Positions 1-47,150 of a stretch of DNA of 64,000 nt are shown here, piece by piece; within the stretch, counting starts at the first letter, position 1, and each line of letters begins with the position of its first letter. The translations under genes were made by a program, and so were the position numbers. Below the pieces are notes generated by a model. It saw only the letters and a program-made list of their open reading frames with translations, did not search any database and was not told where the DNA came from. Source of the DNA: Scyliorhinus canicula (taxonomy: Eukaryota); assembly GCF_902713615.1 (NCBI RefSeq), contig NC_052158.1, forward strand, positions 38,369,729-38,433,728, given 5' to 3'.

Positions 1-284
1 ATGAGCCATTCATCCAGTCTGAACAGACAGGCCAGCTTCTTCCCTCTCCGGTAACTGCCGGTCAGCTAACTCTGCCATCCTGACCTGGTCTGACCTCCAT
101 GGGACTCCAGATCCTTATTCATGTGGTTGACTGTTAAATAGCCCAGGACATCACAGTTTAATGGGAATTTGGGATGGGCAATGTGCCGGCTGACATCCTA
201 TGAATGTTTCTTTTTAAAACACGACACCACTCACTCTTGCCAACTTTCTGTCCATTGACAGTTGCCCGATTTACTGTTGTGTAA

Positions 285-328
285 CTAATGTCCACATATT
301 TGCCATATCAGGCCTGGCTGCAGACTTG
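285..328 (-). CDS. Candidate terminal cytoplasmic exon of the class I gene (unverified)
   Basis: Best-looking minus-strand acceptor downstream of the TM exon (cattaactttttattttgtgcacttggcag). The phase-1 frame reads ASLQPGLIWQICGH* and there is an ATTAAA at 157-162. No homology support. Confidence 0.25.
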
Positions 329-734
329 CTGCCAAGTGCACAAAATAAAAAGTTAATGAAATGTGTTAGAGGGCCGGTGGAAAATCGTCCATTTTCCACT
401 GTGACTAAATAGTGAAATTCCCTCATGCGTCCCCCAATCGGCACTATTTACAGATTTCCCGCTCTCGTTTGATTAATGAACTAGATCGACTGAGTCATTA
501 GCTGGCATGTTGCGTTGACAACCAAGATCAATTTCACATCCTGAATCCGTTAATAAAGAATTTAATCGCAAAATCACTGTACAAAGACCACAAAGATTTC
601 AAAATACCCACTTAAACACGGGGCATTCTTCAGCCCCATCAATTCGTACAGCCATGTTTTCTTCAGGTGAGCAAATATTCCTAATCGCATTGACCCCATT
701 CTCATATTCCTTCAACTACTTTTTCCTTCATCAT

Positions 735-1190
735 CTGTCCAATCTAATCTTAAATCACAGGATCACAGAACTGTTATGACACAGAAAGAGGTCATTTGGC
801 CCATTGTGTCTGTACCGGCTCTCCGAATGAGCATTATGACTTAGTGTCATTGCCCTGCCTTTTCTCCGTACCTCTGCACATTGTTTCTATTCAAATAATC
901 ATCTAATGCCCTATTGAATGCCTTGATTGAACCATTCGCTGTGAAAAAGCTTTTTCTCACATCACATTTTCTGCTTTTGCAAATCAGTTTAAATCTGTGC
1001 CCAGTCGTTCTTTATAATTTTAGGAGCGGAAACAGTTTTCCTCTATCTACTCTGTCCAGCCCCCTCATATTTTGAACATCTCTATTAAATCTCCTCTTTG
1101 CCTTCTTCTCTCGAAGGAAAATCTTCGCAAAGTCTCCAATCTAAGCTCATAACTGATTTTTTTCATTCCTGGAGCACTTCTTTAAATGTT
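735..1190 (-). mobile_element. Degraded CR1 LINE 3' fragment
   Basis: Reverse-strand similarity to the CR1 3' ends elsewhere in the window (for example 48190-49130). Confidence 0.6.
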
Positions 1191-1628
1191 GGCAGAGGCC
1201 CTGGCTGAAGTTCTTTCACTCCTCGTCTCTGTCTAAATAATTTTACCTGTTGTGACTTAAGACAGTGCACACCATTTGGTAGACATTATCTGAGTGAATC
1301 CTGTCTGTCACTTTCCTGAAGCTCAATGTGCCCCTGCCATGGGAAGTTCAACACTGCAAACAGTGTTCTTACTGAGCTCATATTAAGCTGACACGCAGGT
1401 TCATCATTGCTTCTTGACTTTCATATTCTACATTTCTTTGGATGAAACCCAGGATCCCACCAGGAAACAGTTCCATGATGAAATTGCAGTTCTTACTCAA
1501 TTTAAGCCATGAGCTAATTGACTGCTATAACTAATATTCACAAATAAAATATAACCATGGGTCCAGGTGAGAAAATATGTTGTGCAGGGTTGCTGTGCAA
1601 TATTTATTTTTAAATGCCCTCGTCTTAC

Positions 1629-1733
1629 CTCTTTGCCTTCTCCATTTTAGATATATTAGAATAATGATTGCCAATGACACCACTACACCCGCGACAATCA
1701 GCCCCACGTGTTCGTCTTTCTTCGTCTTTCCTT
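1629..1733 (-). CDS. MHC class I connecting peptide/transmembrane exon ([35 protein letters not shown])
   Basis: Acceptor gttgcag|AA, donor AG|GTAAGA, 105 bp, phase 1. A hydrophobic run of about 20 aa is followed by the basic stop-transfer sequence KWRRQR. Confidence 0.85.
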
Positions 1734-10700: not shown

Positions 10701-13700
10701 GATAAAAGTGTGGGGGAAGCAGCTCAATGAGCAGCTCTCATGGGCAGCTCTTTAATGAGCCGGTGAATGGCAGTACTTGATGAAAGGGTTGGGGGCCTGG
10801 GAGTGCAGGCATTTTAGCAACTTTCACAAGGAACATTCATCGCGACAGCCTAAAGGCGACCGGAGAACAAGGTTTCCGAGAATCAGAAGATATTCCAGAC
10901 TGTAAATGGGATGCCAGTGCATTTAGAAAGGTGGCGAGGTGGACAAAGTGCTCCATGTGTTAGTCATGGGCCTCGCTGTTGAGGGTACAGTATTATGTTG
11001 TCCAGGAACTTTTCAAAATTGCCTTGCCCAAGAAAGAGTAAGATCAACTCGCAGACATGCCTGACAGTTTGTTTTATTCCATAACCTTATCCAACTGTTC
11101 GTGAATTATCAGGGGTGTTGACTGTTCATGGTTTATGGGAAAAGTTGTTTCATATGGGAAAAGTTGCTTATTTGATGATAAAACTTGTATACCCAAGACA
11201 TAAAGTAATATATCCAACAACAACAACAACAAAGAAACAAGTGAGTCTGGCATATGCTGGACTACAACATTAGGAAATTGCTCTTACCCCAAGGGACAGT
11301 CTTCCCATTCGGCAAGCTGCTGTGCTCAATGTGGCAAGAATACTGCTTCCCGTCATACGGGTCAAATTGGAGGACTGTCGTCAGTTGATAGGTCCCATTT
11401 TCATTGGGCAGCAAGCCAGTCGATCTGGTCTCAGGAACGTGTTCCCCATTCTTCAGCCAGGTCACATCGATGGACTGTGGGTAAAATCCACGCACGGTGC
11501 ACTGGAGACACCAACCTGACCCATCCCTGGCACTGACTGAGACCTCGGGAATAACTGGATGGCATAATGACAGTTAGTTTCACGGTCAACGCAAATCATG
11601 GTTATAAAGCCATGAGGGAAGCATAGCTTTTTGCCGCAAGTTTATCCCAGGCAGCAACGAATCAGCCCAGTTAAAGGGATTCGAGCACGAAAAGGCCTCC
11701 AACAGAATCAGGGCCAATGTATGGAACCATTGCATTCTTTACGACAAGCTTGAAAATAACCTCTACATTGTCCTCAACTTACCTTTCCTGGTGAGGGATG
11801 TGTTTCCAATAGCATAGTACGTCCACCATAGATTCACACAGTCATTTTCTAGCAGGCTCTTGAAATAACGGTTCATCTTTGTTTCTCTATTCCACTTCTC
11901 TTTCATTTCCTGAGCAATTTGTTGATGTGCAGTCCAAACCAATGTGTTTTTATCAAAGCTCAGAACATAAATCCCATCGTAAGCTAACTTCAGAATCCCG
12001 CCGCTAGGTTTGGTACCATTCAGCTCACAGCCAAACAGTCCTTGTACGAAATGGGTACCTGAAATATCAATTTAGTCCATGAAAGTTTTGACATTTACCT
12101 CATCTATTCACAGCAAATTTGAGAATTTCTCTTTGCTTCAACCTCCCATTGAATCCATTCATTGCTGTCGGTAGAATTTAAGCAAAGTGCAGAAAACACA
12201 TCTCAATAAATGGGGAGGTTGAATTTACAGAACAGATCTTACGATCACTGGACCAGACCCCAATAGTGGTTAGGACACTGAACATAAATCCCAAAGTGTA
12301 ATTTTAATTTAGTTAAGATAAAACGGTAAGTCACCAGAGTCCCAGATGACCATAGGCTGCTTGCATCTTTTACAGGGAGAACTGACTGATGGTGATTTAA
12401 CCTGAGGTTCACTACCTCAGGAGAGGGGCAAGCTTCATGAATATCCTTAGGCGGTATGGGAATCGAACCGGCGCTCCTGGCCCTGCTTTACATCATGAAA
12501 CAGCTGTCCAGCCAGCTGAACTAAACTAATCAAAACAGTAGCAAAATAATCCCTCACTGCTGTCTATGTTTCCACTCAAACAACAAAAAAACCATCCTAG
12601 CTCTCAATCCACTTTCAAATACAATTAACATTCAGGAATACCCGCTGTAGAGATATCTGGAGATGCGGGCAGGTTGTTTCCACTGGCAGGTGAAAGCAGA
12701 ACTAGGGGACATAGCCTCAAAATAAGGGGAAGTAGATTTAGGACTGAGTTTAGGAGGAACTTCTTCACCCAAAGGGTTGTGAATCTATGGAATTCCTTGC
12801 CCAGTGAAGCAGTTGAGGCTCCTTCATTACATGTTTTTAAGGTAAAGATAGATAGTTTTTTGAAGAATAAAGGGATTAAGGGTTATGGTGTTCGGGCCGG
12901 AAAGTGGAGCTGAGTCCACAAAAGATCAGCCATGATCTCATTGAATGGCGGAGCAGGCTCGAGGGGCCAGATGGCCTACTCCTGCTCCTAGTTCTTATGT
13001 TCTTATGTTCTACTTCGAGAAACAGATGAAATGAAAAATGAAATGAATGAATGAAGATTTTAAAAATGTAACCATGGAATACCTACTGTGCAGATGGGGA
13101 CATCTCAGCCCATTGAGTCTGCACCGATCCAATGAAAAAGCACCCTACCTCAGCCCATGTCCCTAACCTATTCCAATAACCGTACCTATTTTTTTAAGGT
13201 AATAAGGGAGAATATAGCATGGCCAATCCACCTAAACTGCTCATCTTTGAACTGTGGGGGGAAACTGGAGCACCCGCAGGAAACATACGCAGACAACGGG
13301 AGGATGTAAGACTCCCCACAGGCAGTCATCCAAGACTCAAATCGAACCTGGGTCCCGGGCACTGTGAGGCAGAAGTGCTAACCACTGTGCCATTGTGACA
13401 CTGCTTTAAAGAAAAGACCTGAATCATGTCAGAACCACACTCAAGAGTTAGAAAGGTGGTGCTACAGAGGGGAAGTCAGGCAGGGGGTTTGGGACTTCCG
13501 AACCTGATGGGGTTGATTCCCAATGGGTCAGAATGGAGGAGAGTTTGTGCAGGAGGTCGGGATTGAAGGTGCTAGCAACAGCGCCACTCCTGATGGCCCT
13601 GGGGAAACACTCAGGGAGTCCGGTAACAATAGCTTACTTGAGAATTTGGAGGCAGTTTCGCCAACACTTCGGGTTGGGGGCAGGGTCAAGGGAAATGCCG

Positions 13701-16700
13701 ATTCAGGGGAACCACAGATTTGAGCCAGGGAAGTGGGACAGAAAGGACTAAAAGATTTGTTTCTTGGGTTTGCAGGATTGAAGGAGCTGGAAGCAACTTA
13801 TGGGCTGGAGCAGAGGGACATGTTTAGATACATGCATGTTCGAAATTTTGTCAGGGAGGAGTTACAGATCTTCCCGAAGGAGCCGGCCTCCACATTGCTG
13901 GAGGAGGTACTGACGACAGGGGGACTGGAGAAGGTGGTAGTGTCAGTGATTTACGGGGCTATTTTAAAGAGGAGAAAGCACCACTGGAAGGGATCAAAAC
14001 AAAGTGGGAGGAAGAGTTGGGAGAGGGTATGGAGGAGGGGTTCTGGTGTGAGGTGCTCTGAAGAGTGAACGCCTCCACCTCGTGCATGAGGTTGGGGCTG
14101 ATACAGCTAAAGATGGTATGTGAGCACAACTCACAAGGGCAAAGATGAGCCGATTCTTTGAGGGGGTAGAAGATGTGTGTGAATGTTACGGAGGGCCGCA
14201 AATCACGTTCATATGTTTTGGTCCTGTCCAAAGCTAGAGGATTACTGGAAGGTGGTTTTTAGGGTAATCGCTAAAGTGGTGCACGTGAAACTGGACTCGG
14301 GCCCTCGGGAGGCCATATTTGGGGTGTCGGACCAGCCGGGGTTGGAAACGGGTGAGGAGACTGATGTATCCTTTGCCTCATTGATCTCCCAAAGGCGGAT
14401 GCTGTTGGGATGGAGAGCAACCTCTCCACCCTGTACCGTGGCGGGGGGACCTTTTGGAATGCTTGACTCTTGAGAAGGTTAAGTTTGAACTGAGGGGAAG
14501 GATGGAGGGGTTCTACAATTCATGGGCATTATTCATTATACAATTTCAAGAATTGGATAACAGCGAACATTAGTTGGAGGGGGATTGGGAGGGTTGGGGT
14601 GAGGGGGACTGTGAGTGTTAATGGTTCCCTTTTGTCATTGTTAGCATGCGGCACTTGTTTGGGGGTTGGTGGGAGGATGGGATTGTTGTTATTGATATGG
14701 GGATTATATTCGCTACCGCTTATTTTTTATTGCTGGTGGGTGCAAAGTTGGGAGAAAATGTGAAAAAGTAGAATAAAAATATTTTTAAAAGAAAAATGCC
14801 AGAACCACACAGTAATTCTGGCTGTATTTTTATCAGAAGCTACTTCACGGCTTGTTTTACCTCACCTTCCAATCACACAATTCTGAACTGTTTATAAAGA
14901 AACTGGTCATCCGTCTGCAGACATATCTTTAACCGAACTGATGCGAGCAGATGTTTGACCTCTGCTGACCTCTCAATCTAAAACTCAACTGAAACAGTTT
15001 TTCTACAAAGTGCCTGATCTTAGCTCCTCTCAGTAATTACATCATCTTACAAAGCTGAAATCTAGTTACCTCCACAGGGATCCCCTTAATCCAAACAAAA
15101 TTCCGTTAGCCCACACTGCTTATGATGCTGTCATTGCACCTCTGGCTCCCAAAACCTTTCACACCAGGATTCTTTAAAAACAATTCTGCAGCAGCCATAC
15201 ACACACTAACCCAGGCCTTTAACCCATACTGCACCATGACTGCAGCAGCCATACACACACTAACCCAGGCCTTTAACCCTTACTGCACCATGACTGCAGC
15301 AGCCATACACACACTAACCCAGGCCTTTAACCCTTACTGCACCATGACTGCAGCAACCATACACACACTAACCCAGGCCTTTAACCCTTACTGCACCATG
15401 ACTGCAGCAGCCATACACACACTAACCCAGGCCTTTAACCCTTACTGCACCATGACTGCAGCAGTCATACACACACTAACCCAGGCCTTTAACCCTTACT
15501 GCACCATGACTGCAGCAACCATACACACACCAACCCAGGTCTTTTACCCTTACTACACCATGGCTGCAGCAGCCATACACACACTAACCCAGGCCTTTAA
15601 CCCTTACTGCACCAAGTACCTAGCATACAATATACCCAAAATTCCTACATTTATCACAAGTTAAACTCAAAATCATTGTTGGCTCCAATCATTGTTTCTC
15701 TGCTTATGCTCATTTCATTAGATAATCTTACTTAGGGCAGCACGGCAGCATACTGGTTAGCACAATTGTTTCACAGCTCCAGGATCCCAGGTTCAATTCC
15801 CGGCTTGGGTCGCTGTCTGTGCGGAGTCTGCACATTCTCCCTGATGTGCGTGGGTTTCCTCCGGGGGCTCCGATTTCCTCCCACAGTCCAAAGATGTGCA
15901 GGTTAGGTGGATTGGCCATGCTAAATTGCCCCTTAGTTTCCAAAATTGCCCTTAGTGTTGGGTGGGGTTATGGGGATAGGGTGGGGTGCTCTTGTCAACA
16001 GCCGGTGCAGACTCGATGGGCTGAATGGCCTCCTTCTGCACTGTAAATTCTATTACTTCTCATGTATGCATTGAATTCCATTTTAAAATAAACAGTAATA
16101 AACGGTCCAAAGGTGTGCAGGTTAGGTGGATTGGCCATGCTAAATTGCTCCTTCATGCCCATAATGTTAGGCGGGGTTACTGGGTAACAGGGATAGAGTG
16201 GAGACGCGGACTTAAGTACTGCGCTCATTCCAAGGGCCGGTGCAGACTCGATGGGCCGAATGGCCTCCTCTGCACTGTAAATTCTATGATTCTATAACAT
16301 CGCGGATTATAATGGGAGAAATCCCAATTTCGACCTTTCATTTTCCTGTCGCTCTGTGCCCCTCATTAACAATTCATGGAAAACATTAATTGCTAACACT
16401 CCTTCCCAACTTCAAAAGCCTCTCACGACCTCCATGACCCTTGTCTGTAACTGTAAAAATGTACTATTTTCGAGTCTATTTAATAAATATAAAAGCTCAT
16501 TCTCGTGCATCGCCTTCCGATGGCTATTGAAACTGTAATGGGAACTCGAAACTATAAGTAACGAACACCATCCCAGCCAATGTCTCTCTTAAGGCACCGC
16601 CATATGCAATACCCGTATGTTCGTATGCCCAATTAATGACTGGTGTGTAAAGCAGCGCTCTGTTCAATGGGTGTCTGTATTTCGCTTGCCATCAGTTCTG

Positions 16701-19700
16701 AAAATTTCTCCTGGAATCAAGCTCCAATTCAGTTGGGTTAAAAAACGACGGGTAGGCGGAAACCCATCAGTTATACCCCCAGGGCCATTATGCCTGAAAG
16801 TGAATTTAAATGAAGGTGAGGTACAATGGAAAGAAATGTGAAGTGATTCATTTTCGCAGGAAGAATATGAGGAGACAGTATAAAATAAAGGTAATGACTC
16901 TAAAAGGGGACTGGAGAGTCTGGGTGTAGATGTGAAACAGTTCTTTAAAGGTGGCAGGAAAGTTGGAGAACGCAAGCAGTGTCCTAGGCTTTATTAGTGG
17001 CGGGGGATAGAATAAAAGAGGTTATGGTGAATATGAATATGAAAATGGAACCAGTTCGGCCTCAGCGAGAGCGTCCAGTTCTGGCACCACACTGTGGGCA
17101 GCATTTGATGACATTGGAGAAGGTACAGAAAACATTTACAAGAATAACTTGATGGATGAGGAGCTTCAATTATGAAGGCTGGATGAGTTACAACAGTTCA
17201 CCCAATGAAAAGGGTCGAGTGTAAACTTGATAGAGATATTCCAATTCATGAAGGGCCTGGATGGAGTAGAATAGGGAGACGCCGTTCCCACTGGGACGAA
17301 TACCAAAAGGAGCGGGCACAGATTTAAAGTAATTAGGAAAAGGAGCAAAAGTGATAGGAGAAAAACCTTTCTTCTCAGGCAGCAACTGGCTAGGAGTTGG
17401 AATGCTCTGCCCAAGAGTGTGGTGGAGGCAGGTTCAATAGAATTGTTCAAAAAGGGAATGAGACTGTCTTTTGAAAAGGAAGCAAGTGCAGGGGAGAAGG
17501 CGGGGGATTGGTAATGGATGAGTTGCTCAATCGGAGCGCCAGTGCGGGCAAGATGGCCCAGAGTCTCCTTTCTTACAACAACCATTCTGTGAGAAGCAAA
17601 TGAGGGTGTCTTAACAGCATGGACATTCAGGCAGGGAGTACAATGGGCGGCCCACTCTCCCCAAAAGTTTTTTTAAAAAACATACACTTGTCGCTCACTC
17701 CATTGACTTCAAACTATTTGACTCACTTGCTGTTTGGTTTTCCTTCTGCAGCCATCTATCCAGCTGTCCCTTGATGAGTCCATGGAAACCAGCTGAAGTG
17801 ATGGTGCACTCGCCCCAGTAGTGCTGGTCAAACGCTTCCGCCATCCATGTTTGCCTTGGAACAGTTATGTTCATATTTTTGTCATAATAGTCTGTCTCGC
17901 AGCCATCCAAAACTCCCATGACACTGTACTCTGGGAGATCCGCAACCCCATGGTTCAGGATGTACTGATAGAGGAGCGAATGAGACACTAGGACAAATAT
18001 ATATTTTTTAAAAGGACACAATTATCATTGACAGATCAAACACTAGAAACATCAGCTTGAGGGTCAACTTGGGAAAGAGCTTCAAATGAGTCAAATCTGA
18101 ATAATTTACACCAAAAAAATGTCTGCACTCGCGTGAAGAGTCAATGTATTAACGGCCCGGATATAGAAAAGTCTACCCACTTTCAATAATATTTACATTT
18201 CTGAGATAACAACGATAAATACGATGGTTCGAATAAGTTATGACAGTCCAATTTGTTTACCTCAGATATGGGGAGCTTCTATTGACTTCGAGCGGCAATG
18301 CGCCCAGTTTTATCATACTAAGCCATAGAGCAGGAGTTCCAAACTGGGGTACATGAAGGATCTCCAAAGGGGTGGGCGAGGCTGGAGGCCGCCATGTGGA
18401 CGCCAACGCCGGTTCGAAAGCTCAAAGTTTCAAAATCGGCCGTTCACCTGAGGAAAGAGCTGTGTTCCGAAAGCTGGTGATTCGAAACAACTCTGTTGGA
18501 CTTTAACCTGGTGTTGTAAGACTTCTTACTGTACTTTAAAAATCAGGGCACTGGATGCCGATAGGCAAGTATTAATCTTCTCCTTCATTCGCCCACAATT
18601 GCAATGATTTATTTTTCTGTTCTTTCCTCTGCGCTGTGTTTATTTCCAGCTCAGTCCCCCCAATCACTACACTTACTGGCCCGCTGTTCTGGTTCCCTGT
18701 TCACAATGTGGTCTACTCTATATCGGAGAGACCAAATGCAGACTGTGGGTGATCAATCTACATAATTTGCTCAGTCTGCAGAGATAACCTGACCTTCTGG
18801 CCCCTTGCCATTTCAGATCATCATCTTGCTCTCATGCTCACATTTCTGTCCTTGACCTGCTCCGTTTCAGCTAAACCGAACACAAACTGTGGGCACAGCA
18901 CCGCACCTTCCAGTGAAGCATTTTACAGCCTCCCAGATTCAATAGCGAATTTAACAACTTCAGACTGTGAACTCTATCTCCCATTTTTAAATGTGTTGTG
19001 GCCCTGCCTTCTGGAGCTGTAGTGCCCAGAATTGATTGCATTACTACAAACCTAATGTACCCAATAGAACTGTGGCATGATAATGACTTGCAAAAGCAAA
19101 ACACTGAAGACGTTGGAAATCTGAAATTAAAAGAAATTGCTGGAAATAATCAACAGGGAGGCAGCAACAAATCTGAAGAAAGGTTATGGACCTGATAAAT
19201 TAAACCTGTTCATTTCTCAAGCATTTTAACAATCTCTTTGTTTTCCATGTTTATCATGTTCTTTGTTTATCATGACACAAAGGTCCAGTAACCTCTTTTA
19301 ATTATTATTTATGTATCATTTATTAGTAATTTATGTACTTCTCATGCTACTTTCTAATTCTCTCTATTGTGCTCAGATACAGCTACTTGCCATTTCACAC
19401 TGTTCTATGTCCCAGGTGGATAACCACATACTTCCTCGCATTCATAAAATCATAGAATTCTTACAGTGCAGAAGGAGGTCATTTGGCCCATCGAGCCTGC
19501 ATCAAAAGAGCACCCCCCCAGGCCCAATCCCCCACTCTAGCCTCATAAAGCTGTAATCCCACCCAACCTTTGGGCACTAAGGAGCATTGTTTTTAAACAT
19601 TGGTCTACCTGCCATAGATCTGCACTTTCGCTTAGTTTATCAATGTCTTTTAATAACTTTATGTTCCTATTTACTAAACAGACCACCCCCAAAATGGAGT

Positions 19701-22700
19701 AATTGGAAAATGCATTGATGTATAATTCTAGTCATTTAGTTTAAGCTATTAAAGAGTTTAGCTTCCACTCATCATGTCCTTGGCGATTTGTAAGATTTCT
19801 CTATTGGCTGATTCCCACCTCCTCACTAATTTGCTGCACAATCCTCCAATTGTTTGCAATCTGCAAGGTTTCGTTTTCTGTTAATGGCCTCCTACATGGA
19901 ACTATCCTAGCACCTTCTGGAAGTCAGTGTAAGTAACATTCATAGAAAATCCCTTCTTGGCCATGTCAGTAACTTCCTCACATTAATTTTTATGACATTA
20001 GTGAGAGTTCTCTGGAGGCTGTTCTCGAAATATCACCAAGAAAGCAATTCACTGCATAAGGATGCGTGTTAATCACAAGAACTACCATCAAACCATACAA
20101 TCTTCATAAGAAGGTGGCCGTCCACATCATCATTAGATCCAGCAGAGGGCAGCAGAGCAGAGCTACTGATCAGCTGTACTGGGGAAATTTGCATACGTGC
20201 AGTGCGGTCAGCCTAAGTTGAAGGTGAATCTGCGAAGGAGACCCGAGGAATTTGAGTGAAGGCAATCATCCAGCAGAGGGCAGCAGAGCAGAGCTACTGA
20301 TCAGCTGTTCTGGGGAAATTTGCATACGTGCAGTGCGGTCAGCCTAAGTTGAAGGTGGTTTGTGGAGAGGCTGTTGGCAAGTGACAGTTAAACCCGAAAC
20401 ACTTCGTGAGTGTTTCCCACCCCACGGTGGTTGGGAAGCGGGAGCAGGGGCCTGTCGTGAAGGTGAGTGAGTGAGTGCCTTTAAATTTGCTTACCTTTCA
20501 GCGGGAGTAGGGTTTGAGGTAATATCAGGTAAGCTCTTCCTTTCTTTTTCTTTTTCTTGTTTTTTTTTTTTAATCTAGAGGTGATGTCAGGGAAGGCAGT
20601 ACAATGCTCCTCCTGCAGAATGTTTGAGGTGAGGGACGCCGTCAGTGTCCCTGCTGATTTCATCTGTGGGAAGTGCACCCAACTCCAGCTCCTCAAAAAC
20701 CGTGTTAGGGACCTGGAGCTTGAGCTGGATGAACTTCGGATCATTCGGGAGGCAGAAGGGGTCATAGATAGGAGCTTCAGGGAAGTAGTTACACCAAAGA
20801 CTGGAGATAGATGGGTAACTGTAAGAGGGACTGGGAAGAAGCAGTCAGTGCAGGGACCCCCTGCGGTCGTTCCCCTGAGTAACAAGTATACCGTTTTGGA
20901 TACTTGTGGGGGGGGGACTTACCAGGGGTAAGCCATGGGGTACGGGCCTCTGGCACGGAGTCTGTCCCTGTTGCTCAGAAGGGAAGGGGGGAAAGGAGTA
21001 GAACATTAGTAATTGGGGACTCAATAGTCAGGGGCACAGATAGGAGATTTTGTGGGAGCGAGAGAGACTCACGTTTGGTATGTTGCCTCCCAGGTGCAAG
21101 GGTACGTGATGTCTCGGATCGTGTTTTCCGGGTCCTTAAGGGGGAGGGGGAGCAGCCCCAAGTCGTAGTCCACATTGGCACTAACGACACAGGTAGGAAA
21201 GGGTACAAGGATGTCAGGCAGGCCTTTAGGGAGCTAGGATGGAAGCTCAGAGCGAGAACAAACAGAGTTGTTATCTCTGGGTTGTTGCCCGTGCCACGTG
21301 ATAGTGAGATGAGGAATAGGGAGAGAGCAATTAAACATGTGGCTACAGGGATGGTGCAGGCGGGAGGGATTCAGATTTCTGGATAACTGGGGCTCTTTCT
21401 GGGGAAGGTGGGACCTCTATAGACAGGATGGTCTACATCTGAACCTGAGGGGCACCAATATCCTGGGGGGGAGATTTGTTAGTGCTCTTTGGGGGGGTTC
21501 AAACTAATTCAGCAGGGGCATGGGAACCTGGATTGTAGTTTTGGGGTACGGGAGATTGAGAGTATAGAGGTCAGGAGCACAGATTTGACTTCGAAGGAGG
21601 GTGCCAGTGTTCAGGTAGGTGGTTTGAAGTGTGTCTACTTCAATGCCAGGAGTATACGAAATAAGGTAGGGGAACTGGCAGCATGGGTTGGTACCTGGGA
21701 CTTCGATGTTGTGGCCATTTCAGAGACATGGATAGAGCAGGGACAGGAATGGTTGTTGCAGGTTCCGGGATTTAGGTGTTTTAGTAAGCTCAGAGAAGGG
21801 GGCAAAAGAGGGGCAAGTGTGGCGCTGCTAGTCAAGGACAGTATTACGGTGGCGGAAAGGATGCTAGATGGGGACTCTTCTTCTGAGGTAGTATGGGCGG
21901 AGGTTAGAAACAGGAAAGGAGAGGTCACCCTGTTGGGAGTTTTCTATAGGCCACCTAATAGTTCTAGGGATGTAGAGGAAAGGATGGCGAAGATGATTCT
22001 GGAAAAGAGCGAAAGTAACAGGGTAGTTGTTATGGGAGACTTTAACTTTCCAAATATTGACTGGAAAAGATATAGTTCGAGTACATTAGATGGGTCGTTC
22101 TTTGTACAATGTGTGCAGGAGGGTTTCCTGACACAATATGTTGACAGTCCAACAAGAGGCGAGGCCACATTGGATTTGGTTTTGGGTAATGAACCAGGCC
22201 AGGTGTTAGATCTGGAGGTAGGTGAGCACTTTGGAAACAGTGACCACAATTCGGTGACCTTTACGTTAGTGATGGAAAGGGATAAGTATACCCCGCAGGG
22301 CAAGAGTTATAGCTGGGGTAAGGGCAATTATGATGCCATTAGACATGACTTAGGATGTGTTGGTTGGAGAAGTAGGCTGCAAGGGTTGGGCACACTGGAT
22401 ATGTGGAGCTTGTTCAAGGAACAGCTATTGCATGTTCTTGATAAGTACGTACCAGTCAGGCAGGGAGGAAGGGGTCGAGCGAGGGAACCATGGTTTACCA
22501 AAGAAGTGGAATCTCTTGTTAAGAGGAAGAAGGAGGCCTATGTGAAGATGAGGCGTGAAGTTTCAGTTGGGGCGCTTGATAGTTACAAGGAAGCGAGGAA
22601 GGATCTAAAGAGAGAGCTGAGACGAGCAAGGAGGGGGCATGAGAAGTCTTTGGCAGGTAGGATCAAGGAAAACCCAAAAGCTTTCTATAGGTATGTCAGG

Positions 22701-44800: not shown

Positions 44801-46941
44801 TCACGACGCACCGTTCACCCTGCTCTGTAACCATCCTCATCTTGGTAAATGCCGTACTCTTTACAAAGCAGTATGGCTACCCCACTAGCTCTCGTCCCAA
44901 TGCATGAATGGTACGTCTGTCCCACCAGCCCTTTCTGAAGGGCAGTCAATCCTTCTCCCTCAGGTGTGTCTCTTGGAGGAAGACTTTTCAGGTGGGCAAA
45001 GAATCTGGATATTTGTACTGGGCCATTAAGTCCTCTGACATTCCAGGTGACTATTATGATGGAGGAGGGGGTATGTTTCCCCTCTCCCCCCCCCCCCCCC
45101 CCTTGCGGGATCAAGCATACTTTCCCTGAGGATGCACCCCTCCATTCCGGTATTTCCATTTTTTAGGGGGCCACCCAAAATGGCCATGGTCACCGTACTC
45201 ACCATGAGGCTACACCTCTGCGCTCCAGGGTTTCCCTTTGTCCATGGGCCACCCAACATGGCTACCACCTATATGTATGCCATGTGGGTGAACCCCTGAA
45301 CTCCAGGCTTTCCCTTTTTTAATGGGCCATCCAAAACAGCCACGGCCACCGTACTCACCATGAGCCCAGTCCCTTGGCTTTGGGAGTTTTCTTTGTCCAG
45401 GAGCCATCCAACAAGGCCATGTGTATGTCATGTGGTTGAACCCCTGCACTCCAGATTTTCCCTTTGTTTGGGGATCCTCCAAAGTGGCTGTTTGTGGAGC
45501 CATTTTGTTACCTCTGTGGCCTTTGTAGCCAGCCTAGAACCCTTCCCCTTTGTCACTTTGATCTCCCCACAGTCCTGCTTCTCTCCCATTCTGCTAGCCC
45601 CACTTCCCTAATGTTGTCCCCCCTCTATTCTCCTACCCATCTGCCCCCCTAATTTTCCCCCTATTGGTGATGTACCTCTCTGCCTCCACCATGTCAGGCC
45701 CTCCTCCCTGATGGGAGATGCACCACTCCCCCTGCCTCATTCATACCCCCTGACACTAGCTTTCCTGCTAGTGTGGTGACCCCCGTCCTGGGATTGACCC
45801 AACTCCCTCTTCCACCCACTGCCTTAATTTCCGCTCTGTCTCCTCCTCACCCTCTCCTGTGCTTTGCTGTCGTCGCCCCTTCCTTTCCGTGTACTGGTTC
45901 CCGGTTTCAGAGTGAGGCGGTACAGACCACGCAAATTGTCCTTTATCGTTCTTCGTCTTTCAGGCGTCTGCCTCTGCTGCTGTTGGCCATTCTTTTGGAT
46001 GAACTCATCTGCGTACGCAGGGGTGGTAAAATAATGTTCCCTGCCTTGGTACGTGACCCAAAATCTGGTTTGGTACAACATCCCGAACTTCACTTCGCTC
46101 ATGTTCTGGGCCAACTTTATTAAATTCTGCCCCCTGCTTTTCCCGCTGGGAAGGTGCGCTCTCCACAAGGGCTCCAAGAATCATTGTACCCGGCGATGTC
46201 CTCGGATTTAAAATCACAGGCAACCCGCACCCCGAAATGCAAAAAAACACGACGTCAACCATGAGACTATCTGGTTGTTAGTGCATTGTTATTACTGGGT
46301 CTATTCCTACTGCCTGCCTTATAGCACAACAGCGAGTGCATTTCAATAACACGCCATTGGCTGTTAAAGGGCACACACTCCGTGGGTCAACGCACACCAA
46401 GGGGTTACACCGAAGTTAAACCTCTTTGAGCGCGGATGCACCACAAGTGTTGGAGATGACATTTAAATACACATTATAAACATCACCTGAAATGGCAAGA
46501 GTGGTGCGGTACCCACTGGATTCAGAGAAAGCATGGCAAATCCTGCAATGTCAAATTTGAACCGTTCTGTAACGTACTATTTCATATTTTCAGTATAATG
46601 TATATTGCGGGTCCGAAGCTTTGGGACGTCCGAGAAAGGCCCTATGTAAATGCAAGTTTTACAATGGAGCAAGGGTAAACTTTGCACCATCACACGCGAT
46701 CGGAATCTGGGGAAAATACAATAAAAAGGCAGGGTTAATCACTTCACTTGCACAGAAAGTATTCCGTTCCTCAAACTGAAAACATCAGCCAGCTGCAGTC
46801 TATAATCCGGTAAAACGAGTCTTGTGCGTGTCGACGTTAAATAAAGCGGCCGGAACAAGAGGACTTACCAGCCAGGGCTGTTTGCACCCGATTGAAACAC
46901 AGCAAAAGTGCCAGAAACACGCCTGGGTCTCCACATGCCAT
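1629..46941 (-). CDS. Nonclassical MHC class I heavy chain gene, spliced: join(46869-46941, 17727-17987, 11783-12058, 11288-11554, 1629-1733, + unresolved cytoplasmic exon)
   Basis: Five exons (73+261+276+267+105 = 982 bp) with canonical AG/GT sites, all phase 1, join into one open frame: signal peptide, alpha1 (SHSLLY...YW...NQT), alpha2 (GCE...AYDG...KW...C), C1-set alpha3 (C..GFYP....W...Y.C...H) and a TM helix. This is the standard class I exon layout. Confidence 0.92.
1772..1946 (+). mobile_element. HE1-like SINE, 3' partial
   Basis: caggttaggtggattggc...gatgggccgaatggcctcc is shared with the full copies. Confidence 0.75.
2075..2845 (+). mobile_element. CR1 LINE 3' fragment (RT C-terminus and 3' tail)
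   Basis: ORF 2011-2664 contains [15 protein letters not shown]...[10 protein letters not shown], homologous to ORF2 at 21489; simple-repeat tail gttcttt. Confidence 0.9.
2950..3455 (+). mobile_element. Old CR1 fragment interrupted by a SINE; its 3' end probably resumes at about 9530-9630 after an L1 insertion
   Basis: The peptide [16 protein letters not shown]...[10 protein letters not shown] is encoded here. The sequence continues across the SINE target-site duplication. Confidence 0.7.
3164..3391 (+). mobile_element. tRNA-derived SINE (HE1-type head) with poly(A) tail and 15-bp TSD
   Basis: A box TGGCACAGTGG, B box GGTTCGAATCC, A-tail, and the direct repeat aaagacacttagtcc at 3149-3163 and 3392-3406. 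Confidence 0.92.
3456..9430 (+). mobile_element. Degraded near-full-length L1/Tx1-clade LINE, split by a CR1 insertion at 4052-6125
   Basis: ORF1-like [21 protein letters not shown] before the insertion and YQDLAAEF...FGVLYP after it. ORF2 remnants ([21 protein letters not shown]) lie at 6850-9400 with many stops and frameshifts. Confidence 0.8.
4052..6125 (-). mobile_element. Young 5'-truncated CR1 LINE (RT domain, FADD intact, two frameshifts)
   Basis: ORFs 4335-5669 and 5666-6475 contain [26 protein letters not shown] and KFADD. Frameshifts lie near 5690 and 4350. The tail is (cataagaa)-like at 4052. Confidence 0.95.
9782..10255 (+). mobile_element. Degraded HE1-like SINE with partial tandem body copies
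   Basis: Head cacagtggtagcactgttgcctcacagc...gggttcaattcc, then a repeated ggtgaattggccatgctaaatt motif. Confidence 0.7.
10348..10528. mobile_element. Penelope-like pseudo-LTR fragment arranged as an inverted repeat, with a minimal hammerhead motif in the loop
   Basis: 57-bp perfect inverted arms at 10382-10438 and 10472-10528. The spacer and arm junction carry CAC-CTGAAGA-A-GGAGC-CGT-GCTCC-GAAA-GC-TC-GTG. Related copies are at 18445-18532 and 50010-50155. Confidence 0.7.
10442..10476 (+). ncRNA. Minimal type I hammerhead ribozyme-like motif
   Basis: CUGANGA core, stem II GGAGC/GCUCC, GAAA, palindromic mini stem III (AGCU), UC cleavage site and 3-bp stem I CAC/GUG. It has one extra A before stem II. 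Confidence 0.55.
11288..11554 (-). CDS. MHC class I alpha3 exon, Ig C1-set ([89 protein letters not shown])
   Basis: Acceptor gccatccag|TT, donor G|GTAAGA, 267 bp. C1-set motifs [18 protein letters not shown] and YSCHIEH. Confidence 0.95.
11783..12058 (-). CDS. MHC class I alpha2 exon ([92 protein letters not shown])
   Basis: Hand-translated because it is absent from the ORF track. Acceptor atatttcag|G, donor G|GTAAGT, 276 bp, no stops. Contains the C101/C164 pair, Q96, AYDG, W133 and K146-W147. Confidence 0.93.
12661..13008 (+). mobile_element. Young CR1 3' end, nearly identical to the reverse complement of 4052-4400
   Basis: About 4 differences in roughly 335 bp by eye; (gttcttat) tail. 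Confidence 0.92.
13070..13400 (-). mobile_element. Diverged HE1-like SINE
   Basis: Reverse complement of the SINE body and head (ggccaatccacctaa...cgaacctgggtccc...tgctaaccactgtgcc). Confidence 0.75.
13440..14795 (+). mobile_element. L1/Tx1 3' fragment
   Basis: C-terminal [15 protein letters not shown] motif, G-rich 3' UTR, AATAAA and A-rich tail. Confidence 0.8.
15186..15615. repeat. 54-bp minisatellite, about 8 copies
   Basis: Unit ctgcagcagccatacacacactaacccaggcctttaacccttactgcaccatga; it translates as an 18-aa periodicity in ORF 15122-15664. Confidence 0.95.
15735..16295 (+). mobile_element. HE1-like SINE (15735-16053) plus a second partial copy (about 16105-16295)
   Basis: Head gggcagcacgg, B box ggttcaattcc, CR1-like tail gggccgaatggcctcc...ctgtaaattctat. 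Confidence 0.88.
16790..17590 (+). mobile_element. Old CR1 3' fragment
   Basis: Degenerate match to the CR1 RT C-terminus (aaatgtgaagtgattcatttt...cagttctggcaccacac...). Confidence 0.65.
17727..17987 (-). CDS. MHC class I alpha1 exon ([87 protein letters not shown])
   Basis: Acceptor tttgtcctag|TG, donor A|GTGAGT, 261 bp. SHS, Y7, LDG, PR..W, Y59-W60 and the N86 sequon NQT match class I alpha1. Confidence 0.93.
18445..18870 (+). mobile_element. Penelope-like remnants: hammerhead-type pseudo-LTR (18445-18532) and GIY-YIG endonuclease fragment (about 18704-18860)
   Basis: 18704-18745 translates to [14 protein letters not shown], a GIY-YIG YIGET motif, and is frameshifted downstream. Confidence 0.65.
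20584..21386 (+). pseudogene. CR1 ORF1 (zinc finger + SGNH esterase), frameshifted
   Basis: Split across ORFs 20557-20931 and 20904-21386 by a slip in the G run near 20907-20917, with a second shift near 21330. Confidence 0.85.
21489..24392 (+). CDS. CR1 ORF2, APE endonuclease + reverse transcriptase (967 aa) with the catalytic motif mutated to FADG
   Basis: YFNARSI, ISETW, MGDFN and SDHN endonuclease motifs; RT motifs QGSVLGP and KFADG (codon GGC at 23592-23594). Confidence 0.95.
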   Translation: MGGFKLIQQGHGNLDCSFGVREIESIEVRSTDLTSKEGASVQVGGLKCVYFNARSIRNKVGELAAWVGTWDFDVVAISETWIEQGQEWLLQVPGFRCFSKLREGGKRGASVALLVKDSITVAERMLDGDSSSEVVWAEVRNRKGEVTLLGVFYRPPNSSRDVEERMAKMILEKSESNRVVVMGDFNFPNIDWKRYSSSTLDGSFFVQCVQEGFLTQYVDSPTRGEATLDLVLGNEPGQVLDLEVGEHFGNSDHNSVTFTLVMERDKYTPQGKSYSWGKGNYDAIRHDLGCVGWRSRLQGLGTLDMWSLFKEQLLHVLDKYVPVRQGGRGRAREPWFTKEVESLVKRKKEAYVKMRREVSVGALDSYKEARKDLKRELRRARRGHEKSLAGRIKENPKAFYRYVRNKRMTRVRVGPVKDSGGKLCVEAEEISEILNEYFSSVFTQEKDNIVEENAETQAIRIDGIEVRREEVLAILDKVKIDKSPGPDGIYPRILWEAREEIAEPLALIFRSSLATGIVPEDWRIANVVPLFKKGSRDNPGNYRPVSLTSVVGKVLERIIKDTIYNHLDRNNMIRDSQHGFVKGRSCLTNLIEFFEKVTEQVDEGRAVDVVYMDFSKAFDKVPHGQLLQKIRRLGIEGDLEMWIRNWLVERRQRVVVDGKCSEWSSVTSGVPQGSVLGPLLFVIFINDLEEGAEGWVSKFADGTKVGGVVDSAEGCCRLQRDIDKLQSWAERWQMEFNVEKCEVIHFGKNNRNAEYLANGKILGSVDEQRDLGVHVHRSLKVATQVDRVVKKAYGVLAFIGRGIEFRSHEVMLQLYKTLVRPHLEYCVQFWSPHYRKDVEALERVQRRFTRMLPGMEGKSYEERLMDLRLFSLERRRLRGDLIEAYKMIRGLDRVDSESLLPRMEVASTRGHSLKLRGNRYRTEVRGGFFTQRVVRPWNALPATVVNTPTLRAFKNLLDKHMDDKGIV
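24794..24977 (+). mobile_element. Second tRNA-derived SINE family (ggggctggtttagctca head, (tttca)n tail)
   Basis: A/B-box-like motifs. Near-identical copies at 31503-31689 (-), 33194-33300 (-, partial), 51504-51693 (+) and 54696-54880 (-). Confidence 0.88.
25020..25930 (-). mobile_element. Probable solo LTR
   Basis: On the minus strand it ends ...GGACATCA with AATAAA about 70 bp before the end; LTR-like composition. The 5' boundary is uncertain. Confidence 0.4.
26218..26442 (+). mobile_element. Short Gypsy-type solo LTR
   Basis: TATAAA, then ATTAAA, ending ggtcgcatca. The 5' boundary and TSD were not resolved. Confidence 0.5.
26470..27540 (-). mobile_element. Old CR1 and CR1/L2-clade LINE fragments
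   Basis: Reverse similarity to the CR1 3' ends and to 50600-52440. Confidence 0.55.
27998..28750 (-). mobile_element. Solo LTR-like element
   Basis: The minus strand begins TGTGATAAATG and ends ...GTTGTCATA. A homologous fragmented copy lies at 12240-15660. Confidence 0.55.
28775..29862 (+). mobile_element. L1/Tx1 3' fragment with GA-rich 3' UTR
   Basis: Homologous to 14200-14500; ends aataaaaacattctttgaaaaaaa. Confidence 0.75.
30066..30255 (+). mobile_element. Short A-tailed HE1-head SINE variant
   Basis: Same structure as 3164-3391; another copy lies at 56362-56575. Confidence 0.75.
30540..31000 (-). mobile_element. CR1/L2-clade LINE 3' fragment
   Basis: Same family as 35540-36060 (+), 47540-47810 and 50600-52440 (-). 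Confidence 0.7.
31503..31689 (-). mobile_element. Second-family tRNA-derived SINE
   Basis: Reverse complement of 24794-24977. Confidence 0.88.
31734..32972. mobile_element. Solo LTR-like element bounded by TGT...ACA
   Basis: Starts tgttatgac and ends ttgttaca (short terminal inverted motif). No clear TSD. Confidence 0.5.
32975..33120. repeat. Degenerate (TG)n microsatellite; a similar tract lies at 33870-33990
   Basis: Seen directly in the sequence. Confidence 0.8.
33120..33625 (+). mobile_element. CR1 3' fragment with an internal SINE fragment
   Basis: Homologous to CR1 3' ends; second-family SINE piece at 33194-33300. Confidence 0.7.
34102..34796. mobile_element. GC-rich non-autonomous DNA transposon (MITE), probably PIF/Harbinger
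   Basis: TIRs gggcggcattctcc / ggagaattttgccc and an apparent 3-bp TSD CAT (34099-34101, 34797-34799). Internal 26-bp perfect palindrome arms. Confidence 0.7.
35050..35393 (+). mobile_element. Young full-length HE1-like SINE
   Basis: Complete head, body and CR1-like tail. Confidence 0.92.
35540..36060 (+). mobile_element. CR1/L2-clade LINE 3' fragment
   Basis: Ends with gggcaataaatgctggcc, the family tail seen in other copies. Confidence 0.7.
36104..36448 (-). mobile_element. Young full-length HE1-like SINE
   Basis: Reverse complement of 35050-35393 with few differences. Confidence 0.92.
36790..37450. promoter_or_regulatory. Candidate intronic immune enhancer (NF-kB, Ets and IRF motifs)
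   Basis: Perfect GGGAAATTCC at 36802-36811, GAGGAAG just 3' of it, and GAAGTGAAAGT (minus) at 37437-37447, in one of the few apparently non-repeat stretches of intron 1. Motif match only. Confidence 0.3.
38310..38800 (+). mobile_element. CR1 3' fragment
   Basis: ORF 38558-38740 [18 protein letters not shown] matches the CR1 C-terminus. Confidence 0.8.
38906..39568. mobile_element. GC-rich MITE related to 34102-34796, in the opposite orientation
   Basis: TIRs gggcgggattct / agaaatcctgccc; internal gggcccgcgatcggggccc is the reverse complement of about 34460-34490. Confidence 0.65.
40018..41262 (-). mobile_element. Rex1/Babar-type LINE 3' fragment
   Basis: [28 protein letters not shown] and [19 protein letters not shown] are typical of Rex1/Babar RT; frameshifted. 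Confidence 0.8.
42100..42455 (-). mobile_element. Diverged SINE (HE1-like body)
   Basis: ccacctaaccc...ggaggaaaccagagca...gtgctaaccactg. Confidence 0.65.
42490..46215 (-). mobile_element. Degraded L1/Tx1-clade LINE (ORF1 3' part, spacer with about 90-bp repeats, ORF2 remnants)
   Basis: [17 protein letters not shown] (ORF1), WNVRGLNGP (endonuclease), [13 protein letters not shown] and [13 protein letters not shown] (RT). Confidence 0.82.
46869..46941 (-). CDS. MHC class I exon 1 (signal peptide) [24 protein letters not shown]
   Basis: ATG at 46941 in a strong Kozak context (gggATGG), hydrophobic core VFLALLLCF, small-residue cleavage motif ALA, then donor G|GTAAGT in phase 1. G+TG gives Val1 of alpha1. 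This frame is not in the ORF track. Confidence 0.78.
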
Positions 46942-47150
46942 CCCTTCCAGCGACCGATTAAACTCGAGTAAACTTGGACTCCTTCAAAGAAGCTGAGCTG
47001 AGCTGAGCTTCCCTCACAAGCGGTCAATGAGAGTCCCTGTCGTCCAATTGCAATCAAAAGCTGCTGAGCCGTCACTGGTTTCGCTTCCGAAGCTGGTTCA
47101 CAGTCCAATGTCTGCCCTGCAATCCAGCAGTGGACATCCTGGGGCGGGTG
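46942..47150 (-). promoter_or_regulatory. Putative class I promoter: ISRE/EICE-like site, CRE half-site, two inverted CCAAT (Y-box-like) sites, GC box
   Basis: On the minus strand: GGAAGCGAAACC (47077-47088), TGACG (47070-47074), ATTGG at 47044-47048 and 47105-47109, GGGGCGGG at 47141-47148. This is CpG-containing non-repeat sequence directly upstream of the leader ATG. Confidence 0.55.

What the first reader, a model, noticed from the sequence alone, without database searches (positions are those of the whole stretch)
11288..17987. Intact but strongly nonclassical shark MHC class I with a hydrophobic, CD1-like groove profile
Seen in sequence: the spliced alpha1-alpha3 frame is open. By-eye alignment to HLA-A2 numbering shows Y7, Y59, K146, W147 and Y171 kept, but Y/R84 is K, Y/F123 is V, T143 is M, Y159 is L, W167 is L and E63 is C. 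Groove-facing positions are mostly apolar (Y9, V24, F70, L73, I74, W81, V95, G97, F99, L114, L116, M152, F156). Established knowledge: classical peptide-presenting class I molecules, including shark UAA, keep the terminal anchors nearly invariant, while lipid presenters such as CD1 have apolar grooves; several nonclassical cartilaginous-fish lineages (UBA to UFA) are described. Inference: this gene binds a non-peptide or hydrophobic ligand and belongs either to a CD1-like lineage or to an unnamed one.
Basis: partly seen in the sequence, partly recalled or inferred. Interest (0 to 1): 0.8.

Follow-up and report, generated by a model that had tools for sequence, protein, structure and literature searches.

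The report
Catshark UGA, a CD1-like MHC gene

Summary
Three minus-strand exons (alpha1 17987-17727, alpha2 12058-11783, alpha3 11554-11288) are open and have canonical splice sites.

Its leader exon lies 29 kb upstream (46941-46869), its transmembrane exon 9.5 kb downstream (1733-1629), and its last small exon lies beyond the window. The five exons translate exactly to residues 1-327 of Scyliorhinus canicula RefSeq XP_038671856.1 (332 aa).

Contigs that behave like spliced RNA, from four studies, carry alpha1 cut exactly at the predicted exon ends, with 0-4 nucleotide differences.

The protein sits in a strongly supported clade of 17 shark and ray proteins, apart from classical UAA. That clade contains PDB 9CH4, titled "shark nonclassical MHC class I, UGA" (released March 2026). 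UFA (PDB 8GM8) is a different lineage.

The 36 pocket positions are more hydrophobic than in classical UAA (mean hydropathy +0.77 against -0.10), and the anchor substitutions are conserved across the family. The short tail ends in a YxxPhi sorting motif (YNIV), as I recall for CD1.

Published remarks describe UFA and UGA as CD1-like lipid binders. The scan has not noted this gene on other DNA.

The parts
47040..47090 (-). Putative proximal promoter. It holds an ISRE-like GGAAGCGAAACC, a TGACG half-site and an inverted CCAAT (ATTGG), just upstream of the transcribed 5' end.
   Evidence: Read by eye. The resemblance to class I ISRE/X2/Y boxes is from memory and untested. RNA-like runs hold words across 46869-47007.
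46869..46941 (-). Leader exon coding part ([24 protein letters not shown] plus 1 base), phase-1 donor G|GTAAGT. Intron 1 is about 28.9 kb.
   Evidence: tblastn with orthologue leaders; sequence; identical to residues 1-24 of RefSeq XP_038671856.1 = P0167; words held by RNA-like runs of 7 studies.
17727..17987 (-). Alpha1 exon (86 full codons plus split codons).
   Evidence: PDB 9CH4 E 1e-43. Contigs of 966-2786 nt in four runs align exactly to 17725-17987 (three runs) or 17725-17931 (one contig that starts inside the exon), with 0-4 differences.
11783..12058 (-). Alpha2 exon (C101-C164 disulfide pair present).
   Evidence: Pfam MHC_I 7e-14. 9CH4 E 3e-38. Depth over 11988-12058 matches that of the alpha1 contigs.
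11288..11554 (-). Alpha3 exon (Ig C1-set domain).
   Evidence: Pfam C1-set 2e-19. 9CH4 E 1e-37. Runs hold about 0.63 of the words of 11288-12058, which is the exon share without the 228-nt intron.
1629..1733 (-). Connecting-peptide/transmembrane exon (105 nt: [35 protein letters not shown]). Intron 4 is about 9.5 kb and holds LINE fragments.
   Evidence: tblastn with orthologue tails, E 8e-9; sequence and AG/GT; identical to P0167 residues 293-327.
1..1628 (-). Start of the last intron. The final exon (codes D-Y-N-I-V-stop) is not in the window.
   Evidence: No match in the window. P0167 ends in DYNIV. The annotated gene spans 62.9 kb, which reaches about 16 kb past the window start.

Best explanation
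This is the Scyliorhinus canicula orthologue of UGA, a single- or low-copy nonclassical MHC class I (MHC-Ib) lineage shared by sharks and rays. It is an intact, spliced and transcribed six-exon gene of about 63 kb. Five of its exons lie in this window.

It encodes a type I membrane heavy chain with the usual alpha1/alpha2 platform, an Ig C1 alpha3 domain, a transmembrane segment and a very short tail.

Most likely mechanism:
- The platform forms a deep, largely apolar groove. Gly at 97, Phe at 99 and 156, Leu at 114, 116, 159 and 167, Ile at 74 and Trp at 81 replace the polar or bulky residues that classical molecules use to hold peptide termini and side chains.
- This groove carries alkyl chains of lipids or other hydrophobic non-peptide ligands.
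- The C-terminal YNIV (YxxPhi) motif routes the molecule through endosomes to load them, as I recall it does for CD1.

Shown here: gene structure, transcription, clade membership, groove composition and its conservation, low variability, and the tail motif.

Taken from others: that UGA binds lipids (a PDB title plus statements in two papers).

Inferred: endosomal trafficking and presentation to T cells.
For: - Gene model. The five window exons equal residues 1-327 of RefSeq XP_038671856.1 (P0167), with 0 differences. The record is GCA_902713615.2.
- Transcription. Contigs of 966-2786 nt in four runs from four studies carry alpha1 bounded exactly at the splice sites. Alpha2/alpha3 words are held at the exon-only share in 8 studies. 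The leader is held in 7 studies.
- Family. 9CH4_A is by far the best solved relative for all three domains (E 1e-43, 3e-38, 1e-37). Its title is 'Crystal structure of shark nonclassical MHC CLASS I, UGA'. There are 18 family proteins from 8 shark and 5 ray or skate species, mostly one gene each. The ectodomain alignment is almost gap-free at 53-96% identity.
- Tree. The window protein falls in a 17-row clade (SH-aLRT 99) whose branching largely follows the species tree. It is separate from Triakis and Mobula UAA.
- Groove. Over 36 pocket positions, mean Kyte-Doolittle hydropathy is 0.71 (window) and 0.77 (family), against -0.10 in 13 Triakis UAA alleles. Non-groove positions are equal (-0.84 against -0.91). 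Substitutions at 97, 99, 114, 156 and 159 are fixed in 16-17 of 17 members.
- Low variability. Alpha1 shows 0-4 nucleotide differences among four runs, of which one of the three listed is nonsynonymous. There are 3 of 86 alpha1 differences between S. canicula and S. torazame, against a mean of 10.8 of 86 between Triakis UAA alleles.
- Tail. A YxxPhi motif follows the stop-transfer residues in 11 of 17 members. It is absent from Triakis UAA and the Acipenser classical tail.
- Literature. PMC10751288 calls UFA CD1-like and places it in an MHC-Ib cluster. PMC12562908 says crystal structure and mass spectrometry suggest that UFA and UGA bind lipids comparable to those of human CD1d.
Against: - No ligand was seen here. 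The lipid claim rests on a review that cites a personal communication and on a PDB title. No primary paper was found in the library.
- Three of the four A-pocket tyrosines (7, 59, 171) and K146/W147 are retained, which fits some peptide-like or acylated ligand.
- K84 is a conservative replacement of the R84 of non-mammalian classical molecules, although position 84 varies within the family (Q7 K6 E2 R2).
- Groove positions are not significantly more conserved than other alpha1/alpha2 positions (0.775 against 0.745, p = 0.19).
- The AlphaFold model was poor in alpha1 (pLDDT 35-45), so no pocket geometry was obtained.
- The YxxPhi motif is missing from 6 of 17 predicted proteins. These may be mispredicted 3' ends, which was not checked.
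- CD1 sequences were not in the tree.
Confidence: 0.8

Rival explanations
1. UGA presents lipopeptides or N-acylated or very hydrophobic peptides rather than pure lipids. The retained A-pocket tyrosines and K146/W147 would hold a polar head or a peptide end, while the apolar floor takes an acyl chain. Chicken YF1*7.1 works this way.
For: Y7, Y59, Y171, K146 and W147 are kept and nearly invariant in the family. PDB holds YF1*7.1 entries that present N-myristoylated or N-palmitoylated amino acids and a myristoylated peptide (titles).
Against: Y159, T143, W167 and Y/F123 are replaced by L, M/F/L, L and A/I/V throughout the family. The review says the bound lipids are comparable to those of human CD1d (PMC12562908).
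Confidence: 0.12
2. UGA is a non-presenting class I-like molecule (in the manner of ZAG, FcRn, HFE or MIC). Its platform would serve another function, with the groove empty, closed, or binding a fatty acid without T-cell recognition.
For: The alpha2 exon matches zinc-alpha2-glycoprotein at E 6e-10, as strongly as many class I chains. No T-cell or receptor data exist for catshark.
Against: It has a membrane-anchored heavy chain with a C1-set alpha3 domain. The central parts of both helices are nearly invariant across sharks and rays, which suggests a conserved partner that reads the top face. The review treats it as an antigen-presenting CD1 analogue.
Confidence: 0.05
3. UGA is an MR1-like presenter of small metabolites. 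NCBI names several orthologues 'MHC class I-related gene protein-like'.
For: Automatic names. MR1 chains score among the better PDB matches for alpha2, at about 2e-9.
Against: There is no lysine where I recall MR1 having its Schiff-base K43; the window protein reads N-I-T-V-P-R there. The groove is aliphatic rather than an aromatic cradle. The names are automatic similarity labels.
Confidence: 0.02
4. It is a classical or classical-derived peptide presenter (UAA/UBA-like), or a decaying pseudogene.
For: None beyond the shared fold and the five retained anchor residues.
Against: It is separated from UAA on the tree by starred branches. Five of ten anchor-type positions are changed. Variability is low. 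The frame is open, the gene is spliced and expressed, and it is conserved in at least 13 species.
Confidence: 0.01

Closest known systems
Shark UGA (PDB 9CH4, 'Crystal structure of shark nonclassical MHC CLASS I, UGA', released 2026-03-18)
   Same: It is the best match for all three domains (E 1e-43, 3e-38, 1e-37) at 66% overall identity, with no gaps. It shares the conserved motifs (AGFHGxIKGQ, KMNxYFKxLLExDC) and the same anchor substitutions. Its printed sequence is closest to the orectolobiform members, so it is probably nurse shark (my inference).
   Different: It comes from a different shark order. The window protein is the carcharhiniform (catshark) orthologue. The ligand in 9CH4 could not be read with these tools.
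Shark UFA (PDB 8GM8, 'Crystal structure of shark nonclassical MHC CLASS I, UFA', released 2024-11-27)
   Same: It is another elasmobranch nonclassical lineage said to be CD1-like. It is the second-best PDB hit for alpha1 (7.7e-10). On the tree its relative P0031 groups loosely with the UGA clade (SH-aLRT 92, unstarred, long branch).
   Different: P0031 is only about 32% identical to the window protein. 8GM8 is not among the top 60 PDB hits for alpha2. It is a separate lineage, so the window gene is not UFA.
CD1 (tetrapod lipid-presenting class I-like molecules)
   Same: Both have an apolar groove, have lost several peptide-terminus anchors, have low polymorphism, and have a short cytoplasmic tail ending in YxxPhi. 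The CD1 tail motif is from memory.
   Different: There is no detectable alpha1 sequence similarity to CD1 at E up to 1 (complete list). UGA keeps Y7, Y59, Y171, K146 and W147 and the N86 glycan site, so by sequence it looks like a modified class I. Orthology to CD1 is untested and is called 'challenging to assess' in PMC10751288.
Classical shark class I, UAA (Triakis scyllium alleles; PDB 6LUP)
   Same: It has the same domain plan and exon phases, a gap-free alpha1/alpha2 alignment, and the disulfides and N86 sequon.
   Different: Identity is about 34%. UAA has R84, T143, Y159, W167, R97, D116 and R156, where UGA has K/Q, M/F, L, L, G, L/F and F. UAA alleles differ by a mean of 10.8 of 86 alpha1 residues, whereas two Scyliorhinus species differ by 3 in UGA.

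Membership tests
UGA lineage (elasmobranch MHC-Ib) | Sequence groups with the molecule deposited as shark UGA, apart from other class I lineages. | tested here: met
   9CH4 is the top hit for each domain and its title names UGA. The 17-row clade has SH-aLRT 99 and is separate from UAA.
UGA lineage (elasmobranch MHC-Ib) | Single or low copy number per genome, present in both sharks and rays. | tested here: met
   There is one copy in the window and one S. canicula protein in the family cluster. Most species have one gene; Pristiophorus and Pristis have three each. Rays and sharks are both represented.
UGA lineage (elasmobranch MHC-Ib) | Linked to the MHC. | tested here: inconclusive
   The window holds no other MHC gene, and there are no neighbours within 10 kb. 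Unchecked scan notes place other class I loci 2.6 Mb and 5.9 Mb away on the same sequence.
UGA lineage (elasmobranch MHC-Ib) | Binds lipids. | not testable with these tools
   Only indirect support is available: the apolar pocket positions and the statement in PMC12562908.
CD1 | Sequence homology or orthology with CD1 alpha1/alpha2. | tested here: not met
   No CD1 chain is among the 52 PDB sequences that match alpha1 at E up to 1, nor among the top 60 for alpha2. CD1 appears only through alpha3/beta2m fusion constructs. CD1 was not in the tree.
CD1 | Hydrophobic antigen groove. | tested here: met
   21 of 36 pocket positions are A/V/L/I/M/F/W/C, against 16 in UAA. Mean hydropathy is +0.71 against -0.10.
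CD1 | Tyrosine-based endosomal sorting motif in a short tail. | tested here: met
   P0167 ends in ...KWRRQRDYNIV. YxxPhi is present in 11 of 17 family members. Its function was not tested.
Classical class I (UAA) | Near-invariant peptide-terminus anchors (Y7, Y59, Y/R84, T143, K146, W147, Y159, Y171). | tested here: not met
   Positions 84, 143 and 159 are changed, as are 123 and 167. Positions 7, 59, 146, 147 and 171 are kept.
Classical class I (UAA) | High allelic polymorphism concentrated in alpha1/alpha2. | tested here: not met
   Alpha1 shows 0-4 nucleotide differences in contigs of four runs. Alpha2/alpha3 words are held at the full exon share in many runs. The sample is small and contigs drop rare variants.
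MR1 | Schiff-base lysine (K43) and aromatic cradle. | tested here: not met
   The corresponding stretch reads NITVPRQ and has no lysine. The position mapping is from memory.

The most novel reading that the evidence does not exclude
UGA keeps the class I A-pocket tyrosines (7, 59, 171) and K146/W147 while the rest of the groove has turned aliphatic. It also carries a CD1-type YxxPhi tail that is conserved from sharks to rays. The most novel reading left open is that UGA is an endosome-sampling presenter of acylated (lipopeptide-like) ligands. That would make it a surviving intermediate between peptide and lipid presentation, rather than a plain analogue of CD1d.
Probability: 0.12. Interest if true: 0.65.

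Novelty: already known. Interest (0 to 1): 0.3.

Why it matters
A lipid-presenting class I molecule in sharks and rays pushes lipid antigen presentation back to the earliest jawed vertebrates. It also bears on whether CD1-type function is as old as peptide presentation. Others have already raised that point: two crystal structures are deposited, and two papers mention UFA/UGA.

This window adds detail for one model species:
- the complete catshark gene model, with its very long TE-filled introns;
- evidence that it is transcribed and varies little;
- a quantified, family-wide hydrophobic groove signature;
- a conserved YxxPhi tail that predicts endosomal trafficking.

RefSeq still labels the gene only 'class I histocompatibility antigen, F10 alpha chain-like', so the correct name is useful for annotation.

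Tried and rejected
- A hydrophobicity and donor scan for a leader within 14 kb upstream of alpha1 found nothing convincing. The real leader is 29 kb upstream and was found only with orthologue sequences.
- Searches for the last exon (D-Y-N-x-V-stop) in the window were negative. It lies outside the window.
- Literature searches for 9CH4, 8GM8 and UFA/UGA found no primary paper. The two J Immunol papers on UDA/UEA are not held. The supplement of PMC10751288 does not label UFA or UGA.
- The AlphaFold2 model of the window ectodomain, built with the 17-row alignment, had mean pLDDT 64.7 and only 35-45 in alpha1. Its TM-scores and Z ranks (chicken CD1-2 tied with 9CH4 and class II chains) therefore carry no weight. 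I used the fold searches only for entry titles and sequence identities.
- The single-sequence model of P0031 was unusable (pLDDT 34.5). It served only to retrieve the 8GM8 title.
- Groove positions are not significantly more conserved than the rest of alpha1/alpha2 (p = 0.19), so I make no claim of special constraint on the groove.
- HLA-A2 was not aligned directly, because no tool-given sequence was available. HLA numbers were mapped through classical shark, sturgeon and lizard alignments plus memory.
- The alpha1-alpha2 joint was not among the 15 joints printed, where TE noise filled the list. It is inferred from exact piece ends and matching depth.


Full report
**What is in the sequence.** The finding's coordinates run from the alpha3 donor (11288) to the alpha1 acceptor (17987) of a gene on the minus strand. 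The three exons are alpha1 17987-17727, alpha2 12058-11783 and alpha3 11554-11288. Each starts in phase 1, each is flanked by AG and GT, and together they give an uninterrupted frame. Pfam recognises alpha2 as MHC_I (7e-14) and alpha3 as C1-set (2e-19). It recognises nothing in alpha1, a first sign of a divergent lineage. A tblastn of the joined protein against the window finds no second class I gene. The rest of the window is mostly retrotransposon sequence.

**The full gene.** With orthologue sequences as probes I found two more exons. A leader exon lies at 46941-46869 ([24 protein letters not shown], donor G|GTAAGT). A connecting-peptide/transmembrane exon lies at 1733-1629. Intron 1 is about 28.9 kb and intron 4 about 9.5 kb.

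The five exons translate to a sequence identical to residues 1-327 of P0167. P0167 is RefSeq XP_038671856.1 of Scyliorhinus canicula, 332 aa, annotated only as 'class I histocompatibility antigen, F10 alpha chain-like'. The last five residues (DYNIV) are coded outside the window. The annotated gene spans 62.9 kb in GCA_902713615.2.

**Expression and variability.** About 15 runs from 8 studies hold 0.5-0.65 of the sampled words of 11288-12058. This is what alpha2 plus alpha3 without the 228-nt intron would give.

I laid contigs of four runs from four studies on 11988-17987. Each run has one long contig (966, 1456, 1789 and 2786 nt) whose matching piece ends exactly at 17725 and, where the contig reaches that far, at 17987. 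These are the alpha1 exon limits. The contigs continue on both sides with sequence not in the intron. Depth over the first 71 nt of alpha2 matches these contigs. So the mRNA is spliced as modelled.

The leader and 5' UTR words are held by runs of the same studies.

Alpha1 differs by 0, 0, 2 and 4 nucleotides in the four runs. By my codon count, 17782 and 17932 are synonymous and 17793 changes Ala65 to Thr. The fourth difference, in X15, was not among the rows shown.

Between S. canicula and S. torazame, alpha1 differs at 3 of 86 residues. The 13 Triakis scyllium classical UAA alleles differ by 10.8 of 86 on average, with a maximum of 20.

**What family it is.** In the PDB, one chain stands far above all others for every domain: 9CH4_A, with E values of 1e-43, 3e-38 and 1e-37. 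Foldseek and VIA-align give its title as 'Crystal structure of shark nonclassical MHC CLASS I, UGA', released 2026-03-18. The second-best alpha1 match, 8GM8, is 'shark nonclassical MHC CLASS I, UFA', released 2024-11-27. It belongs to a different lineage, whose relative P0031 is about 32% identical to the window protein.

An exhaustive profile-free search with alpha1 found only three 50%-identity clusters close to it. A search with a full-length relative found 18 proteins from eight shark and five ray or skate species, mostly one per species. Their ectodomains align almost without gaps at 53-96% identity.

In a maximum-likelihood tree of 57 class I ectodomains, the window protein sits next to S. 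torazame, then Mustelus, then Cetorhinus. All lie inside a 17-row clade (SH-aLRT 99) in which the batoids form their own supported group. Classical UAA (Triakis, Mobula) forms a separate supported clade. This is the pattern of an orthologous lineage older than the shark-ray split.

**The groove.** Alpha1 and alpha2 align without gaps to classical Triakis UAA and to a sturgeon classical molecule. They also align to 6LUP and to Anolis 7CPO. I mapped 36 pocket positions, using HLA-A2 numbers from memory through these alignments.
- Kept: Y7, Y59, K146, W147, Y171.
- Changed relative to shark UAA: 84 R to K, 143 T to M, 159 Y to L, 167 W to L, 97 R to G, 99 Y to F, 114 F to L, 116 D to L, 156 R to F, 155 Q to Y, 74 G to I, 81 L to W. 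Position 123 is V.
- Most of these changes are fixed or nearly fixed in all 17 family members: G97 in 16, F99 in 17, L114 in 17, F156 in 17, L159 in 17.
- Mean hydropathy of the pocket set is +0.71 (window) and +0.77 (family), against -0.10 for UAA. All other alpha1/alpha2 positions are alike (-0.84 against -0.91).

So the hydrophobic shift is specific to the groove and is old. Groove positions are not significantly more conserved than the rest of the platform. The three domains are about equally conserved (64%, 65% and 69% mean pairwise identity). That differs from classical genes, in which alpha1 is the variable domain.

**A further CD1-like trait.** The cytoplasmic tail is very short and ends, right after the basic stop-transfer residues, in a Y-x-x-hydrophobic motif. 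The motif is YNIV in the catshark; YNTV, YNVV, YNAV and YNVI in other sharks; and YQTI, YENI and YESI in rays. It is present in 11 of 17 predicted proteins and absent from classical Triakis and sturgeon tails. From memory, this is the type of motif that sends CD1b, CD1c and CD1d through endosomes. Its function here is an inference.

**Literature.** Verissimo et al. 2023 (PMC10751288) mention an unpublished elasmobranch lineage, UFA. [quoted passage not shown] A 2025 review (PMC12562908) cites a personal communication. [quoted passage not shown] I found no primary paper.

**Verdict.** The interpretation (nonclassical, hydrophobic non-peptide groove, CD1-like) is supported. The lineage is not unnamed: it is UGA, already identified and crystallised by others. 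So this is a correct rediscovery rather than a new thing.

By sequence the protein is a modified class I, not a CD1 family member; no CD1 hit appears for alpha1 at E up to 1. 'Works like CD1' is therefore much better supported than 'is a CD1'.

Open points are the ligand itself, the role of the retained A-pocket tyrosines, MHC linkage in this assembly, and whether the tail motif acts as predicted.

Noticed in passing
window 20481-24392 (+), inside intron 1: A LINE with an uninterrupted 967-aa ORF2 (endonuclease 1.3e-17, reverse transcriptase 2.7e-34). It is preceded by an ORF with a weak GDSL-esterase match (8.9e-6), the ORF1 type I recall for CR1/L2-like elements. It lies antisense to the gene and may be a recently active copy.
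   Followed up: partly
window 4335-6475 (-) and 2011-2664 (+), inside intron 4: Truncated reverse-transcriptase ORFs of related LINEs (RVT_1 4.6e-34). One is in the same orientation as the gene. They account for much of the 9.5 kb between alpha3 and the transmembrane exon.
   Followed up: partly
window 15186-15614, intron 2: A 54-bp minisatellite of 7.9 copies at 95% match. It produces a spurious 180-aa ORF on the plus strand.
   Followed up: yes
window 15588-16387 and 12588-12987, intron 2: Repeat copies here attract enormous summed contig depth in the RNA-like runs (up to about 1e6) and hundreds of joints. They are abundant transcribed transposon families, not part of the gene's mRNA.
   Followed up: no
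window 47040-47090 (-): Just upstream of the transcribed 5' end lie GGAAGCGAAACC (9 of 12 matches to the class I ISRE AGAAGTGAAACT as I recall it), a TGACG half-site and an ATTGG box about 20 bp further on. The order recalls the ISRE and X2-Y modules of MHC promoters. Untested.
   Followed up: no
P0168 (XP_072331300.1, a Scyliorhinus species); corresponds to window exon 1733-1629: A predicted isoform joins alpha3 directly to the last exon (…TVPW-DYNTV). The transmembrane exon is 105 nt, so skipping it keeps the frame and would give a secreted UGA. I did not check whether S. canicula makes this form.
   Followed up: no
P0008 (Leucoraja erinacea XP_055486430.1, partial): This skate class I-like protein is 42% identical to the window protein, and its best solved relative is also 9CH4 (2.9e-60). 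It lies outside the UGA clade on the tree. It may be a further UGA-related lineage in skates.
   Followed up: partly
window protein, mature positions 29, 60, 194: There are extra cysteines beyond the two canonical disulfide pairs. C29 (alpha1 floor) is nearly invariant in the family. C60 (HLA position 63, on the alpha1 helix) is present in only 5 of 17 members. C194 precedes the canonical C197 in alpha3 (WCLQC). Their pairing is unknown.
   Followed up: no
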